64,000 nucleotides of DNA, taken from assembly GCA_965637545.1 (NCBI GenBank), contig OZ281496.1:13082001-13146000 (forward strand). Reading direction: 5' to 3'. Below the pieces are notes generated by a model. It searched no databases. It was not told where the DNA came from and saw only the letters and a list, made by a program, of their open reading frames with translations. The position numbers and the translations under genes are program-made. Within the stretch, counting starts at the first letter, position 1, and each line of letters begins with the position of its first letter. Origin of the DNA: Phallusia mammillata. Taxonomy: Eukaryota. This document shows, piece after piece, positions 13,214 through 61,979 of this stretch.

Positions 13214-13369
13214 TAACACAGACTGTATGTAGCAGTTACGTAGTCACGTGTAACAATACAATAATAATTAAGAGGTTTAAAAAAGCTGTTCATTAATACT
13301 GTAGATATAGTCATGAGAAATTTAAAATATTTTACGACCCAGAGTGGGAGGTTTCGCCATGCTCTAGTG

Positions 13370-13667
13370 CAGTGGTTCCCAACCTTTTTTTGTCGCGACC
13401 CAAATACTTACCAAAATTTTGTTTTGTGGCATCTCGCGACCCATGGATATACTATTTGGGTTGTATTTTTGTTTGTAAATCAGGAAAGTTTTTCGAAAAT
13501 TACTACGCTAGTTTGTAAAATAAATAACATCAAACAAAAAATATTCGTTTTTAGTCATGAAATTGTTATTAGGAAACAATTCATAGCCTTGGGAAACAAC
13601 AAAATAACGCTACGAAACGTAGATGCTCTAATTTTCACAAAAGCTTGGCGTAGGTTGGGAAACACTG
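13370..13667. mobile_element. hAT MITE
   Basis: CAGTGGTTCCCAACC / GGTTGGGAAACACTG; TSD CTCTAGTG on both sides. Confidence 0.92.
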
Positions 13668-13689: not shown

Positions 13690-14020
13690 CGCCACGATTT
13701 CTTAAAGTCTGTCGTTGCCACTATTAAGCTGTGCGGAAAACAAGGCTTACCGTTAGTTGGGCAGCGGGGTAACGGTCGTTTAAATTCGCATGATGGCAAT
13801 TTCAATTTCTTTGGCGCTTCTTAGGTTCCGCAGAGACGATTCTGCAGTAGAGCAATATTAATGCAACGTACACCAGCAAAACGGTTCACACTCAACTGAT
13901 TGAACTATGTGGCAACTATATACGAGCTACTTTAGGTAGCGATATAAATTAAACCTTTCATTTTTTTCCACCTTGCTGACGAAACTACAGATGTCGCAGA
14001 TAATGAGAAGTTATCAGTCA
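13690..14020 (+). pseudogene. Degenerate hAT transposase fragment (DUF4371/ZMYM1-like)
   Basis: Manual translation gives IKLCGKQGLPL, DGNF..ALLRFR and LADETTDVADNEKLS in broken frames. Confidence 0.65.
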
Positions 14021-14023
14021 CTA

Positions 14024-14890
14024 ACCCTGTTTACATGCGTCGTCTGCAAACGGATCGGATTAAGCCTTAAGCCGGCTTGAGATTTGATCCATTCCAGCGA
14101 CCTATTTACATGCGCGTATCGTACAAGTTTTAATCCGTTTGTGTAAACATAGTTATAACACCTCTTGTTTTGGTTACAAAGGATACTTACAAAGTAACTA
14201 ACAATTATCGCCTGTTTTATTGTGTGAAAAGGATCACTGCTTCATTTAGAGCTTTTGTAGAAGTGAGAAATCAAGCTGTTAGTTTCCTATAAGCAGTTAG
14301 GGTAACTGATTGACATTTTTTCTTGTCAGTTGGTTTATTGTTAACTGTTGGGTTCCAAAGCTGATGGAACAAACCATGCTTAAGTATTATATTTTGTTTA
14401 GATAACAATAAAAATGAACTATCAGGAAATACTTGGAGTTGTCCTGGTCATAAAATATGTTTTGGACTGTTACATTATGATGGTTGAGTGGGACAGAGAG
14501 AGCAAACACAAAAAGTTTAAGTTACTATTTGGTGGACTGAAGTTCTTGCAGAGCAAAGTTGACAAGCGAAGTGGCAGAATTTGGATGTATCCAAGGTAGT
14601 AAACTGTAACTAGCCAACCTGTGTTATGAAGCTTTTTTAGAATTATAAAATGTTACAGGACAGGAAACTACTGGGAAGGTGATGTTTCACAGTACAACAA
14701 TGCACAATGGATCCAAAACTTTAGGATGACAAAAGAAAACTTCATGGAGTTGTTGGCTATAATTCATGATGACATAAAACCAGGTTAGGACCAAATATAT
14801 ATATGGCAATACATTTGAAACATCTTTATCATTACAGTGCTAACTAAGTAATCATTTATTGCAGAGGACATAACAGTCCGTGAGCCGTTA
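14024..14890 (+). mobile_element. Left part of a Harbinger transposon (TIR plus transposase exons 1-3 start)
   Basis: ACCCTGTTTACATG TIR-like end; exons 14414-14595 (..RIWMYPR), 14659-14783 (..WIQNFRMTKENF..) and 14865 onward, with the same intron phases as the Harbinger at 60002-61591. Confidence 0.8.
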
Positions 14891-16348
14891 GCGGCTGAAC
14901 TACGGCTAGAGTTAGACAAGGCTAACTTTGTCACCGTTACAATCGATGCTTCGAACAGAAAAGACATCAAACTTGTTCCAGTTGTGGTTCGTTACTTTGT
15001 GCCCGACTTGGGCGTAAAAGTAAAGCTGTTGGAGTTTAAATCACTTGGTGGTGAAACTTCAGAAATACTTAGCAACTACTTAGTGTCTATTCTTGACCAA
15101 AATGTGCTAAAAGAAAAACTTGTTGGATTCTGTGCGGACAACTGCAATACTAACTTTGGCGGTGTAAAAAGAAAAGGGAAAAATAACGTTTTCTTCAAAG
15201 TAAGGGAAAGCCTGAAAAGAAAAATAATAGGCATTGGATATGCTGCTCACATTGTTCACAACTGCCTCCAACACGCAGTGGATACATTGCCTGTGTGTGT
15301 GGAAAGTCTTGTAGTAAAAATCTACGAATACTTCCACATTTACACTGTTCGCGTTACCGAACTGAAAAATTTTTGCGACTTTGTCGAAATTGAATATCAG
15401 CAAATCTTGCAACATGGTAACACCAGATTTTTGTCTTTGTTACCAGCTTTGCAAAGAATACTTGATATGTTTGAAGCTCTAAAAATTTACTTTAACTCCC
15501 AGGAAGGCTGTCCAACACTAATCAGAAGATGTTTTGAAGAACCATCGCAAGAGCTTTATTTGAAATTTGTCCAAGGCTTACTGAAGTACTTTAACGAAAT
15601 TATTTTGAAGTTGGAAAAAGAAAATGCCAGTGCTGTAGATATGGCAAACGTTCTGTCGGAACTAAAATTAAACTTACGTGAAAGGAAGGAGATCAGCTTC
15701 ATTCCGTACCAAGCACTGTGTCTTTTAGAAAAGCTGGAAAACGCTGGGGAAGTGGATGGAAAAATATTCCGTAAAAAAACAACTGAATTTTATCAAAAAT
15801 GCCTATCATATCTGGATCTTTACGAGGATGCTTATAAAGATGTGTTACCTCATCTTTGGATTGATCTAAAAGCAGATGAAATATCATGGCCTAGTGTTCT
15901 TTCATCGGCAGAGCACATTAACACCCTGTTTGGAATTCAGGTAATCAACAGCGACTCCCTTTTCGACGAGCATGTGCTAATCAAACGGTATCTGTCTCAA
16001 CATGATAAAAACGAAAGCTGGAAAAAGGAATGTTGTGAAAAAAAGTGGGTCGAGATGTTTGCCTTCCTTTCAGAAAAAAATGTACTCACTCCAAACTTTC
16101 GAAAGGTGATGGAATTTGTATTTTGCTTACCAGGGACTTCGGCACTGGTGGAGAGAATTTTTTCCATTATGAAAAATATGTGGTCTGACAATAAAAGCAG
16201 AATGTTGGAGCAGAATGTAAAAGTCCTTCTGACATGCAAACTTAACACTAATACGTCATGCTGCGATTTTTATGACAAAGTTAAATCGAACAACGAGTTC
16301 TTAAAAAAAGTACGAGGTACAGATAAATACGACTGGTCCAAAATGTAA
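14414..16348 (+). CDS. Predicted spliced chimeric Harbinger-N-terminus / hAT-transposase-core protein (596 aa)
   Basis: Exons 14414-14595, 14659-14783, 14865-16348 with GT-AG introns of 63 and 81 nt give 1791 nt without internal stops; hAT motifs IDASNR, ADNCNTN, HGNTRFLSL, ALVERIFS. Confidence 0.6.
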
Positions 16349-16906
16349 ATTGATTGCGTGTTTGCTTTTTGTGTTGAGTAATTCGGATATCGTTGTTCGT
16401 TTAAGTTAGGTGGTAGAGTAGTGGTTGAAACGCAATAGATTTTAGCTTAATATTCCTCAAATTATGGGAATGCTAAAGAATGAATAAAATGTAATTTATT
16501 TGCTGTGTGATTGTAGCGTTTCGTTTGTGTCTGTAAGGTTTACTCCTTGTTTTTGTGTACGTGGTATTTTTTGGACAGTATCCACCCCAGCCTTCCGCCT
16601 GTCAGTAAGTTTCATTTTCAGGATAAAAATCTTATCGTCTGTTTTTGATGTAAAAAATACCGCATGTTTATGTCGTTAAAAATGTCTGTGTTTTCTGCTG
16701 CGTTCGCAAATACACAGCCAGATTTTGTTGATTATGATCAGGTCAACCACCTTCAGGCAGATCGTACAGAAGAGGTCGCGACGGCGTTGTCTTATATCAG
16801 TAATATCACCTACTATGCTAACCTTTGTTCCCCCAACACAGAAGAAACGGGAAAAAAATTGTTTGGAAGTGTCCCGGTTTAAAGTAAAAAACATATGGCA
16901 AGCCTA
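14890..16906 (+). mobile_element. 5'-truncated hAT element (Blackjack-like) with right TIR
   Basis: 454-aa ORF 14984-16348 with hAT catalytic and dimerisation motifs; right end ATATGGCAAGCCTA (reverse complement TAGGCTTGCCATAT) with subterminal GTCCCG; no BED finger or left TIR. Confidence 0.82.
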
Positions 16907-16969
16907 AGCAGACACGACATTGCAGTTTTAAACAATTAACAAAAGCCTGCACTGAGCACTGTAAAACAA

Positions 16970-17280
16970 AACTCGCCCTACCATCCCCAATCATCAGCTC
17001 TTTGGATGGTTAGCACCAAGTGAACAGCAAAAACTTGCTAGGTGTGTATGTGATGAAAAGAGTTGGAAAATCATTCCAGACTACCCAGTTTGGTTAGAAT
17101 ACTGTGTATTATGGTTCTTAACCTTTTGTTGGGAGGAGGAACTTCGGGTACTACCACACTTGTGTCAGAGCAATATGTAGATGTGTCAGAGCAATATGTT
17201 TTTCCTGATGTAGACCTAGAGAGTGGTTTAAGAAGTAAGTGTAAAGCAAACACAAGTACATACCATGCAATGGTGATTTA
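16970..17280 (+). pseudogene. Possible Gypsy integrase remnant
   Basis: TCGCCCTACCATCCCCAATCA translates SPYHPQS (integrase PYHPQSNG-like); the rest is degenerate. Confidence 0.35.
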
Positions 17281-18243
17281 GTTATGACATAGGCGTATTA
17301 CCTGCGACCAAACAACTTCTACCAACAGTTACCGACATCACAAACATAGCTTAAACATTGTATTCCACCTACTCGGGAAAATTTTAAAACGACTGTTATA
17401 AGTTATTCCTGTCAAATACGCATTGTTTTACAAAATTAGCAATGTATATAACTGTATTCGGCGACTTACCGCAAGGAAAACAAGTAAGGAGAATTTTTTT
17501 AGAGAAGTTTAAGCCGTTAAATTTATTTTTAAACTCTACAGTTGCTTAAATTGAAGAACAATATGTGTTTTTCCCTATACCCGCTGCACTAATTTGGACA
17601 CAAAATGGCGGTCATGTGGGTCTGTCGCGTGACAATGAGATGGACAACTTGTGTCTACCACCTTCAGCAGAGAACAAAGCAGTTTTTTAAAAGTCCCAAA
17701 ATAGCTAAAAACATACTAATAAATTGTTCATTTAGTTGTCACAAACACTTTCCGAGTTTCGAAACTTAATTACAACTGTAAAAGTGTAACGTTTTTCGCC
17801 GTGGGATAAAAAGTCAGTTAAGCCTCAAGGACTGTTAAGGGGGCTTAATGGCATTGAATTGAAATGTCAGAGAGGTTTAATAACATTGCTGGTCCAGGAG
17901 AGTTATTAGAAGATGTAAGACAAGCATTAAAATGCAGGTGCTACTAGCAAATACCAGTAGTGGTATCCAGATGTAACCAGATCTACTGATAATATGAAGG
18001 CTGAAGGTTCCGCTAATACCGACAAAATGATGATCAGGGAGTTTAATCGTGCTGAACTTACGAAGGCCATAGGTAAAAACATCAGGTTTTGAAAAACAAT
18101 CAATCACAAAATTTTAAATGACAAGAAAAGACTGAACAACTTGCAAATTGTGATTGGCTGATGGATTGTAGACCAAAAAAATTTAATTTTCACATTTGTA
18201 TTTTGATCAATTTATTATATTATGTTTTTTTTTTACTGTAAAC

Positions 18244-60001: not shown

Positions 60002-61591
60002 TTAAAGGAAGCGGCTAGATTCACGCAATGGCAAAGATTTTACAACATGTGACAGCAAAGCATTTCTACATAGTACACCATCTTGGTCTGCAGCATCACA
60101 TGGACGACTAACTGGCTGCTGAGGCACAACAGTAGTGAATTGCAGTCGACCCACAGTATCAGCAATGGGCACATTTAAACCTTCACACATATTATGTAAT
60201 ATGCAGCAAGCCCCAATGATTTTAGGAGCAAAAGTTATATCACACTAAATTTTTCTTAAAATACGCCATCGTGCCTTTAGTTTTCCAAATGCATTTTCAA
60301 CTGCTATTCGTGCACTGCTGTGATAGCAGTTGAAAGATTCCTTTTCTGCTGAAAGATTTGAACCAATAAATGGCTTAATTAACCAGGACAGCAGTGGGTA
60401 TGCTGGATCACCAAGGATTAGTAATGGCACACGAAATCCCTCAATTACAATCGGGACCTTTGAACAAAAAAACAACATTTAAAACTCACTTTATCACTAA
60501 AACACCATGTGTATCAAATACCAACCTGTGGAAGCATATTGGAATTTTTAAATAATCCAGAGTTCTTGAAGACTGTAGCATCGTGGCAACTTCCTGGCAT
60601 TTTTACAGAAATGTTTCTGAAACTGAAAAAAAATCGAGTGACCTCATGTATACAAATAAAACATAACTTTGCTTACCGGTACATGTCATCCACAACACCC
60701 TGCAGAACCAAAGAATCCCAACCTTTTCTGTTAGTGTAATCCTTTTTTCCTTTAACTGGAGCAGTTACTGCTATGTGGCTACCATCAATACAGCCCATTA
60801 CCTAGGAACAAAGAGCAATTATATACACCTTGCAAATTTAAAACATATTTTCTCATACCTGAGGAAAGTGTGACTTTTCCTCGAATCTTCTGGCTATTTC
60901 TTGGGCCTCTTCATTGCCAGGCATAAATATGTGATTTGTTATCTGTTTTACGAGGGCATTACACAACCTGATACAAAAGCAAGTTTTTAGTTGTTTTAGA
61001 CAAGAATATAATTCTCAAAACTTACCGCAATAGACAGTTATGTACAGAAGCTTCACTAACTCCAAACAGTTCACCTATGGTTCTGTACTCAGCAGAGGAT
61101 GCAAGCTTGTATAAACCAATGGCAACACGTTTTTTTGTATCAATTGGTTGTCTAACAGCAAATTCGTCTGAAAAATACAAAAGTACTGAAAAAAAAACAA
61201 AAAAAAAAGAATTGTCAACTAACCAGGTTTCATTTCATTCCAGACCAACCCAACTAATCGTTCAAAGTCAGCTTTGCGCATTCTAAAATGTTTTATCCAC
61301 TGGGAATCATCAAAATTCCTGACAATTTTTTCCCAAAAATCTTGTGATCTGAAGCAATACAAAAATTTTAAACCTGAAACTTAAGATAAGTCGGCAGTGA
61401 AATGCATAGTACCTTGGTAACATCCAAATTCTTTTTAACTTTTTCTCTGTCTGATTAGATTTTGTTTTTGATAAAACTGCAAACAATACCCTTCTTGACC
61501 TTTGACGTTTTTGAAAATAAGAAAAAACTGAGTATACTTGCAGCAAGTATTTGCAACACAAGAGGTAAAATTGAGCCTTGTTTGTGTCCAT
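60002..61591 (-). pseudogene. HARBI1-like DDE transposase, 7 exons, 410 codons, one premature TAG
   Basis: Exons 61413-61591, 61224-61348, 61026-61167, 60859-60967, 60677-60801, 60526-60622, 60002-60457 splice in frame; GCIDGSH, GSCHDA, LGDPAYPL, VENAFG motifs; TAG at 60245-60247. Confidence 0.9.
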
Positions 61592-61979
61592 TTCTTATCA
61601 ATTGAAAACTCTAAATTCCTTTACCTTAATATCACAATACATCAAAACAATGCTTTGTAACAACCAAGTTTTAAAAATGTTTGTAAGATACAAATAAAAA
61701 ATCACACGAAGCCTGCACCAAACAAGCGGGTTACGAAAACGCGCCATGTAAATTGAGGTGCTTAGCGGGGTAGAACGGGGAACACCCGCGATAGATTTCT
61801 ATGCGGGCTAACGCGCATCGCTAACCCGATCATGTAAATAGGCTTATTGTTGTGTAATTATGCTATTTTGTGATGTGAATATATGTACCTATATTGTTTT
61901 GTACCTATGCCACTCTGTGATGTCAATATTTTTACAGATTTTGTTTTGTGCCTATGTCCACCCTTATATAAAACAATTG

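What the first reader, a model, noticed from the sequence alone, without database searches (positions are those of the whole stretch)
14024..16906. In-frame, spliceable Harbinger-hAT chimeric transposase gene with hybrid ends
Seen: after a Harbinger TIR (14024), exon 14414-14595 (..WMYPR, phase 2) and a 125-nt exon 14659-14783 match the intron phases and exon-2 length of the Harbinger at 61 kb. Exon 3 starts EDITVREP (cf. DEFAVRQP) and runs without a frame break into LAAELRLELDKANFVTVTIDASNR and the whole hAT core to 16348. The total is 596 aa with no stops, in a region where most TE ORFs are broken. The unit ends in a hAT right TIR (16906). The D, D and E residues are present, the BED finger is replaced by the Harbinger N-terminus, and the CxxH motif reads YAAH. 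Inference: a deletion, perhaps at the shared EP codons, fused two superfamilies into a new expressed or domesticated protein.
Basis: partly seen in the sequence, partly recalled or inferred. Interest (0 to 1): 0.78.

Follow-up and report, generated by a model that had tools for sequence, protein, structure and literature searches.

The report
One-off Harbinger–hAT fusion gene remnant
A deletion joined the front of one jumping gene (Harbinger) to the back of another (hAT) so that the reading frame stays open and a spliced fusion RNA is made, but nothing shows that the fusion protein has a use.

Summary
Window 14019-14886 is the first ~870 bp of a PIF/Harbinger element: left end, 5' region, exon 1, exon 2 and 22 nt of exon 3. 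Window 14887-16906 is the last 2,020 bp of a 2.8-kb hAT element, ending exactly at that family's right terminal repeat. The junction 14886/14887 occurs once in the 240-Mb genome. It is a blunt join without microhomology, and CC|G keeps the frame, giving 596 codons by arithmetic.

Contigs of RNA-like runs show both predicted GT..AG introns removed. One run, X7, has a contig carrying the window-specific letters that crosses the junction, so the spliced chimeric RNA exists.

- There is no shared "EP" breakpoint.
- The fusion lacks the DNA-binding parts of both parents: the hAT zinc finger and the region matching Hermes 1-146, and the Harbinger HTH and DDE_Tnp_4 domain.
- Its private amino-acid changes hit conserved hAT residues: CxxH Cys to Tyr, and Pro to Leu beside the catalytic Glu.
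- The synonymous/nonsynonymous counts do not differ significantly from decaying copies.
- An open frame over this stretch is also kept by 2 of 8 other copies.

Most likely this is a young, immobile, transcribed by-product of a deletion. The joined protein was not searched or folded. The genome is probably Phallusia mammillata.

The parts
14019..14886 (+). 5' part of a PIF/Harbinger element: left terminal repeat, 5' region, exons 1-2 and the first 22 nt of exon 3. It is truncated at 14886.
   Evidence: Matches L013/L014/L015 positions 1996-2879 at 94-95% and then diverges. The full copies carry DDE_Tnp_4 further downstream.
14019..14040 (+). Harbinger left terminal inverted repeat (CACTAACCCTGTTTACATG..)
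   Evidence: All four copies start with the same letters. An inverted match sits at the right end of L014.
14414..14595 (+). Exon 1 (ATG to ..WMYPR, phase 2)
   Evidence: Translation. Spliced joint 14595/14659 in RNA-like contigs of X4 and X7.
14596..14658 (+). Intron 1 (63 nt, GT..AG)
   Evidence: Skipped in contigs of X4 and X7 and not in DNA run X2.
14659..14783 (+). Exon 2 (125 nt, ..FRMTKENFMELL..)
   Evidence: Translation. Same length and phase as the Harbinger at 61 kb. Identical to the three full copies.
14784..14864 (+). Intron 2 (81 nt, GT..AG)
   Evidence: Skipped in contigs of X4 and X7.
14865..16348 (+). Fusion exon 3: 22 nt of Harbinger, then the hAT catalytic core, insertion domain and hATC domain, through the stop codon.
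   Evidence: Translation. PF05699 hit. Hermes Z 21.5, model residues 1-466 aligned to Hermes 147-609.
14886..14887 (+). Harbinger/hAT breakpoint. Blunt join in which CC|G makes a Pro codon.
   Evidence: Parent sequences compared. The 28-mer across it is found once in the genome. It is crossed by X7 contig 25 with 0 mismatches.
14887..16906 (+). 3' 2,020 bp of a ~2.79-kb hAT element. The first ~765 bp, with the left repeat and the zinc-finger codons, are missing.
15239..15250 (+). CxxH motif reading YAAH. The Cys to Tyr change is private to this copy.
   Evidence: All 10 other genomic copies that cover the site have G at 15240. 15 of 15 distant homologues have Cys.
16145..16153 (+). Codons LVE of ..SALVERIFS.. 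holding the catalytic Glu (16151-16153). The Pro to Leu change at 16146 is private to this copy.
   Evidence: The stretch aligns with Hermes ..SAASERTFS...
16894..16906 (+). hAT right terminal inverted repeat (..TATGGCAAGCCTA)
   Evidence: Same end in 11 other copies with unrelated flanks. Left repeat TAGGCTTGCCATA and 8-bp target duplications in full copies.

Best explanation
This is a single, immobile rearrangement product. A Harbinger element and a hAT element lay in the same orientation. A deletion removed the Harbinger from its position ~868 onward, whatever lay between the two elements, and the first ~765 bp of the hAT. The ends were joined bluntly (inferred: end joining). By chance the join kept the frame.

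The Harbinger part still supplies its 5' region (promoter inferred), start codon and two introns. The locus is therefore transcribed and spliced into an mRNA with an open 596-codon frame.

The predicted protein is about 110 residues of Harbinger N-terminus, cut before the helix-turn-helix, fused to the hAT catalytic core, insertion domain and hATC dimerisation domain. It has no hAT zinc finger and nothing equivalent to Hermes residues 1-146.

With both parents' DNA-binding modules gone and an invariant Cys lost, it is most likely a non-functional, slowly decaying by-product. It is neither a transposase nor a domesticated gene. With one Harbinger end and one hAT end, neither family's enzyme should be able to move it (inferred).
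For: - Two families meet at one point. Query positions 1-863 match only Harbinger copies and 864-2883 only hAT copies.
- Both families extend beyond the breakpoint in their other copies.
- The junction 28-mer is unique in the genome.
- There is no microhomology at the join.
- The rest of the Harbinger is not found downstream of 16906, so this is not a simple nested insertion.
- The hAT right end lies exactly at 16906.
- Spliced joints 14595/14659 and 14783/14865 appear in RNA-like contigs and not in the DNA run. X7 contig 25 covers 14862-15205 with 0 mismatches and carries the window letter at all five window-specific sites it covers (four private to this copy, one shared with L005). X7 contig 24 carries the window's letters in exon 1.
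- The hAT fold starts at the junction: Hermes Z 21.5, model 1-466 aligned to Hermes 147-609.
- The full-length family protein has ~138 further N-terminal residues with a C..C..H..H finger. A 67%-identical homologue gives a weak zf-BED hit.
- DDE_Tnp_4 and the weak HTH hit lie downstream of the Harbinger breakpoint.
- Private changes are C126Y, K155E, S208I, P428L and A454V at conserved columns.
- The private synonymous to nonsynonymous ratio of 7:11 is not significantly different from 26:81 in other copies.
- 2 of 8 other copies keep the same frame open.
Against: - The window-lineage ratio, if the 6 changes shared with copy L005 are included, is 11 synonymous to 13 nonsynonymous. That is nominally lower than in other copies (Fisher p 0.045), so weak constraint cannot be excluded.
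- The breakpoint falls almost exactly at the start of the hAT catalytic domain, which is convenient for a modular protein.
- The whole 596-codon frame is open, while every sampled full hAT copy has at least one hit in its first 140 codons.
- Translation and protein stability were not tested.
- Only contigs, not raw reads, were available, and the junction contig has only 25 aligned letters (30 with the spliced tail) on the Harbinger side.
Confidence: 0.8

Rival explanations
1. The fusion is a young functional gene. For example, it could be a truncated hAT transposase expressed from a Harbinger promoter. Through its hATC and insertion domains it could form mixed oligomers with full-length hAT transposase and dampen transposition (a poison subunit), or it could have another new host function.
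For: - Open 596-codon frame, with spliced transcription in X7.
- The dimerisation domain scores above the Pfam cut-off and the fold is predicted with confidence, pLDDT 82.
- The nominal excess of synonymous changes on the window lineage is 11:13 against 26:81, p 0.045.
- Truncated transposases that repress their family are established for P elements and Ac (background knowledge).
Against: - Once the changes shared with L005 are removed, the signal disappears: 7:11.
- Private changes hit conserved residues.
- It is a single copy with no known orthologue.
- No protein of this architecture appears among 140 homologues.
- The region equivalent to the Hermes intertwined dimer domain is missing.
Confidence: 0.1
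2. The junction is an assembly error that joined two repeats.
For: - Both sides are multi-copy repeats.
- No DNA contig across the junction was listed for run X2. Its listed contigs at 14886 and 14887 run on into the intact parents.
Against: - An independent RNA-like run (X7, another study) has a contig that crosses 14886/14887. It carries the window letter at all five window-specific sites it covers (four private to this copy).
- A DNA contig of X2 covers the unique right-end/flank junction 16878-17037 without mismatch.
- Contigs drop rare variants, so absence in X2 means little.
Confidence: 0.03
3. It is a working hybrid transposon whose hybrid protein recognises its own hybrid ends. The Harbinger N-terminus would recruit the Harbinger Myb-like partner to the left end, and the hAT core would cut.
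For: - One intact end of each family, and a DDE triad that is present.
Against: - There is only one copy of the junction in 240 Mb.
- No target-site duplication can be defined.
- The hAT DNA-binding regions and the Harbinger HTH are absent.
- The CxxH Cys is lost.
Confidence: 0.01

Closest known systems
hAT superfamily transposases (Hermes; Ac; the FAM200/DUF4371-type animal hAT group)
   Same: - RNase H-like DDE core interrupted by an all-helical insertion domain, plus a C-terminal hATC domain (PF05699; Hermes Z 21.5).
- Family copies have 13-bp TAGGCTTGCCATA terminal repeats and 8-bp target duplications.
- Homologues of 40-67% identity occur in Ciona, fish, aphids and spiders.
   Different: This copy lacks the left end, the zinc finger and everything before the catalytic domain. 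Its CxxH Cys is Tyr, and it carries a foreign N-terminus.
PIF/Harbinger transposase genes (HARBI1-like, DDE_Tnp_4)
   Same: - The 5' end, first two introns and N-terminal ..RIWMYPR.. / ..FRMTKENF.. motifs are those of a family whose full copies carry DDE_Tnp_4 (E 1e-16).
- The intron positions are shared with a diverged relative at 61 kb.
   Different: Only the first ~110 codons remain. The HTH, the DDE_Tnp_4 domain, the second gene and the right end are gone.
Chimeric genes that fuse a transposase domain to other coding sequence (SETMAR, GTF2IRD2, KRABINER and other host-transposase fusions; background knowledge)
   Same: A transposase-derived domain is placed behind a foreign N-terminus and promoter, and the product is joined by ordinary splicing into one frame.
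   Different: In those cases it is usually the DNA-binding domain of the transposase that is kept, the partner is a host gene, and the fusion is conserved between species under purifying selection. Here the partner is another transposase, the DNA-binding parts are lost, and no conservation is shown.
Truncated transposase repressors (P-element KP, truncated Ac products; background knowledge)
   Same: An internally deleted element encodes a shortened protein that could still associate with the full-length enzyme.
   Different: KP keeps the DNA-binding domain and loses the catalytic part. This one is the reverse, and no repression was tested.

Membership tests
hAT superfamily | RNase H-like catalytic core with an inserted helical domain, as in Hermes | tested here: met
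   AlphaFold model with pLDDT 82. Foldseek gives Hermes at E 1.8e-9. VIA-align gives Z 21.5, rmsd 4.0, 386 aligned residues, model 1-466 against Hermes 147-609.
hAT superfamily | C-terminal hAT dimerisation domain (PF05699) | tested here: met
   E 2.1e-7, 31.1 bits against a cut-off of 21.4, residues 388-458. A profile hit to the Hermes C-terminus scores E 2.7e-6.
hAT superfamily | D, D, E catalytic residues | tested here: met
   D28, D92 and E430 of the exon-3 product sit in near-invariant or invariant columns of 16 homologues. Their assignment as the catalytic triad is by motif position and is inferred.
hAT superfamily | CxxH motif | tested here: not met
   The window reads YAAH. 15 of 15 homologues and all 10 other genomic copies that cover the site have Cys.
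hAT superfamily | N-terminal zinc finger (BED-like) DNA-binding domain | tested here: not met
   It is present in the family (MPKRKC..C..C..H..H), and a 67%-identical homologue gives a weak zf-BED hit, E 0.009. It is absent from the window copy, whose hAT part starts after ..CIVPM.
hAT superfamily | Short terminal inverted repeats and an 8-bp target-site duplication | tested here: not met
   The family meets this: TAGGCTTGCCATA at both ends, with perfect 8-bp duplications in L003 and L011. The window copy has only the right repeat and no definable duplication.
PIF/Harbinger superfamily | DDE_Tnp_4 catalytic domain | tested here: not met
   It is found in full copy L013 (E 1e-16, 61 bits), but it lies downstream of the breakpoint and is absent from the window unit. 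Pfam finds nothing in exons 1 and 2.
PIF/Harbinger superfamily | Terminal inverted repeats with a 3-bp TWA target duplication | tested here: inconclusive
   A 16-19 bp inverted match was seen between the left end and a right end in L014. The flanks do not show a clear 3-bp duplication, and the window copy has only the left end.
PIF/Harbinger superfamily | Second gene for a Myb-like DNA-binding partner | tested here: inconclusive
   Minus-strand ORFs in L013 (4081-4353 and 4522-4953) gave no credible Pfam hit. This region is absent from the window unit.
Domesticated transposase gene | Immobile single copy | tested here: met
   The junction is unique in the genome and the ends are mismatched.
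Domesticated transposase gene | Purifying selection on the coding sequence | tested here: inconclusive
   7 synonymous to 11 nonsynonymous truly private changes, against 26:81 in other copies, which is not significant. Counting the changes shared with L005 gives 11:13, p 0.045. Several changes fall at conserved sites.
Domesticated transposase gene | Orthologue at the same site in other species | not testable with these tools
   No related eukaryotic genomes are available here. No protein of this architecture appears among the homologues found.
Domesticated transposase gene | Expression as a mature mRNA | tested here: met
   Spliced contigs carrying the window's private letters, and a contig across the junction, in run X7. 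This is contig-level evidence from one study.

The most novel reading that the evidence does not exclude
The chimera is a newborn gene. A Harbinger promoter and N-terminus drive a hAT catalytic and dimerisation module stripped of DNA binding. That module could act as a dominant-negative partner of the still young hAT family, or could be the raw material for a new host protein. This would be a rare look at the first step of transposase domestication by fusion of two superfamilies.
Probability: 0.07. Interest if true: 0.6.

Novelty: new variant of a known kind. Interest (0 to 1): 0.3.

Why it matters
Fusion genes built from transposase domains are a known source of new regulators, but their first, unselected stage is rarely caught. 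Here the parents, the exact breakpoint, the retained promoter and introns, and a spliced transcript can all be documented. It is a clean example of how easily an expressed in-frame chimera arises by accident in a genome rich in transposable elements. It also shows why an open frame and a transcript are not evidence of function. If the protein turned out to interfere with hAT transposition, it would be a tractable model of self-regulation and early domestication.

Tried and rejected
- **Nested insertion (hAT inside Harbinger, or the reverse).** Rejected. The sequence after 16906 does not match the rest of the 3.2-4.1 kb Harbinger. The sequence before 14019 does not match the hAT 5' part.
- **Microhomology or a shared EP codon at the breakpoint.** Not found.
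- **Reading the common start of all hAT matches at 14887 as a true element end.** Rejected. Other copies continue ~765 bp further upstream among themselves.
- **Selection test on private substitutions.** Underpowered and not significant once variants shared with L005 are removed. The Harbinger part gave no discrimination: 2.7-4.9% substitutions in exon 1 and the introns, and none in exon 2.
- **Harbinger target duplication.** Could not be defined.
- **Literature searches for Harbinger-hAT chimeras and for Phallusia transposons.** Nothing relevant.
- **Earlier scan notes.** Nothing on this locus.
- **Word-index protein search with exon 3.** No protein with this architecture, and no near-identical entry.
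- **Not done, by the operators' rule.** The joined spliced 596-residue product was not searched, folded or printed. Exons were handled one by one by reference.
- **Not possible.** A second read-laying run to look at DNA runs for junction-spanning contigs.

Full report
**What is there**

- Exon 1 is 14414-14595 (MNYQ...RIWMYPR, phase 2).
- Exon 2 is 14659-14783 (125 nt, ..NAQWIQNFRMTKENFMELL..).
- Exon 3 runs from 14865 to the stop at 16346-16348.
- The lengths add to 1,791 nt, which is 596 codons plus a stop.

The diverged Harbinger on the minus strand at 61 kb has the same phase-2 end of exon 1 (..RIWMLPR), a 125-nt exon 2, and an exon 3 beginning DEFAVRQP.

**Two families meet at one point**

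I searched the window's own genome with 14024-16906. The genome is 240 Mb, and the window is C3:13082001-13146000.
- Query positions 1-863 match three other loci at 94-95%.
- Positions 864-2883 match at least ten other loci at 96-97%.
- No locus other than the window itself crosses 863/864.
- A 28-mer across the join occurs once in the genome.

The three left-hand relatives (L013-L015) share about 3.2 kb or more with each other, and one shows a matching inverted end ~4.15 kb away. They continue past the breakpoint with ..VREP|IPVDKRMGIAVFKLASSAEYRT... One of their later ORFs hits DDE_Tnp_4 at E 1e-16, so this family is PIF/Harbinger.

The right-hand relatives continue about 765 bp further upstream among themselves. 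There they have a left terminal repeat TAGGCTTGCCATA and a single ORF that starts MPKRKCKLTSQ...C..C...H....H. L003 and L011 have perfect 8-bp target duplications. Every copy ends at ..GGCAAGCCTA, which is window 16906, followed by unrelated flanks. This family is a hAT of ~2.79 kb.

**The join**

The window reads GTGAGCC|GTTAGCGG. The Harbinger parent reads GTGAGCC|AATACC. The hAT parent reads GTGCCGAT|GTTAGCGG.

There is no microhomology and no shared EP codon. The hAT parent has ..CIVPM|LAAE... Both parents are cut after the second base of a codon, so CC+G gives Pro and the frame is kept. For a random join that is a 1 in 3 event.

The rest of the Harbinger is not downstream of 16906. The hAT 5' part is not upstream of 14019. 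A simple nested insertion is therefore excluded.

The simplest history is a deletion between two same-orientation elements repaired by end joining. That history is inferred. The size of the lost DNA is unknown.

**Is it transcribed and spliced?**

Only contigs of public runs could be laid.
- In two RNA-like runs from different studies (X4, X7), a contig skips 14596-14658 and 14784-14864 with GT..AG ends. DNA run X2 shows no such joint.
- X4's spliced contig carries the letters of the intact Harbinger copies and runs on into AATACCAG.., so it comes from another copy.
- X7 contig 24 carries the window's letters at 14507 and 14534, where the three full copies differ.
- X7 contig 25 (349 nt) lies on 14862-15205 with no mismatch. 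It has the window letter at all five window-specific sites it covers: 14926, 14965, 15061, 15088 and 15175. Four of these differ from every other genomic copy, and 15088 is shared with L005.
- Contig 25 has five further letters in front that do not fit the intron. Together with the ambiguous CAG, that gives the 30-letter overlap with spliced contig 24 that a k=31 graph would produce. That these five letters are exon-2 letters is my inference.

So a spliced RNA that crosses the chimeric junction exists in at least one study. This also argues against a misassembly. Level, ends and strand cannot be read from contigs.

**What the protein would be**

Exon 3 hits the hAT dimerisation domain. A model built with 15 homologues has pLDDT 82. 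It matches Hermes transposase with Z 21.5, rmsd 4.0 Å and 386 aligned residues, model 1-466 against Hermes 147-609.

The hAT part therefore begins almost exactly where the catalytic domain begins. Everything equivalent to Hermes 1-146 is missing. From background knowledge, that is the BED finger and the intertwined dimer/DNA-binding domain. The family's own first ~138 residues, including the zinc finger, are also missing.

D28, D92 and E430 sit in near-invariant or invariant columns.

The Harbinger contribution of ~110 residues stops just before the segment that gives the only, weak, HTH signal. It is far upstream of DDE_Tnp_4. The fusion therefore has the DNA-binding module of neither parent.

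Exons were treated separately.

**Any sign of selection?**

Over 14888-16348 the window and 2 of 8 other copies keep the frame. The other copies have one to a few lesions. All sampled copies have independent lesions in the first 140 codons.

The window has 24 coding differences from the family majority, 11 synonymous and 13 nonsynonymous. Six are shared with L005, a copy about 22 kb upstream of this unit. That leaves 7 synonymous and 11 nonsynonymous truly private changes. The pooled private changes of the other copies are 26 and 81. This is not significant. Only the uncorrected count reaches p 0.045.

The private amino-acid changes include the following.
- C126Y in CxxH: 15 of 15 distant homologues have Cys.
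- K155E: 13 of 15 have Lys.
- S208I: 11 of 15 have Ser.
- P428L, next to the catalytic Glu: 11 of 15 have Pro.
- A454V: 12 of 15 have Ala.

That pattern is what relaxed constraint looks like. The Harbinger part shows 2.7-4.9% substitutions in exon 1 and the introns, none in exon 2, and 3 of the 5 exon-1 changes are nonsynonymous. This is uninformative.

**Verdict**

The structure is real, unique, in frame, spliced and transcribed. The best explanation is a young deletion product whose expression rides on the retained Harbinger 5' region. It cannot move, because it has one end of each family, and it probably has no function (confidence 0.8).

A regulatory or newborn-gene role cannot be excluded (about 0.1). 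An assembly error is unlikely (0.03).

The organism is probably the ascidian Phallusia mammillata. A UniProt entry of that species is a truncated member of this hAT family, 94% identical to the window's exon 3 over the shared part.

Noticed in passing
window 13802-14022: The 221 bp directly left of the Harbinger end encode a hAT/DUF4371-like motif (..ADETTDVADNEKLSV..). They recur at 98% identity with the same two boundaries at G000:C3:14840093-14840313 (L018), where a different sequence follows. This looks like a fragment of another, older hAT-like element or an exon-like module.
   Followed up: partly
window 14019-14140: The first ~92-117 bp of the Harbinger match many other loci at 88-97%, and DNA run X2 shows a depth of ~570 there. 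That suggests a family of short non-autonomous (MITE-like) derivatives sharing this end.
   Followed up: no
L005 (G000:C3:13071567-13073584, about 22 kb upstream of the chimera and 8.4 kb before the window start): A neighbouring hAT copy shares 6 of the 24 window-specific coding variants, clustered at 15712-15784 plus 15088. This points to common descent or gene conversion between nearby copies.
   Followed up: partly
P0032 (UniProt A0A6F9DMT6, Phallusia mammillata): A 352-residue entry named 'Numb protein' is a truncated transposase of this hAT family, 94% identical to the window's exon 3 over the shared part. The name looks like a misannotation. It also shows the family is transcribed.
   Followed up: partly
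window 16333-17039: A contig of RNA-like run X14 runs from the hAT 3' region across the right terminal repeat into the flank. It has 7 differences and a 5-nt insertion at 16578. This could be read-through transcription, DNA carry-over or an allelic variant.
   Followed up: no
L002, L003, L005, L006, L008, L011 (first 140 codons of the hAT gene): Each sampled copy has its own stop, frameshift or deletion near the 5' end of the transposase gene. No fully intact copy was seen among those sampled, although the family is only ~3% diverged.
   Followed up: partly
window 13360-13650 and 17560-17655: High-copy short repeats flank the unit on both sides: dozens of matches at 87-93%, and the second one has inverted partners ~360 bp away at other loci.
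   Followed up: no
window 60180-61600 (minus strand): A diverged Harbinger relative, 65-75% DNA identity to the L013 family, has the same intron positions in its first three exons. The intron-exon structure therefore predates the split of these families.
   Followed up: partly
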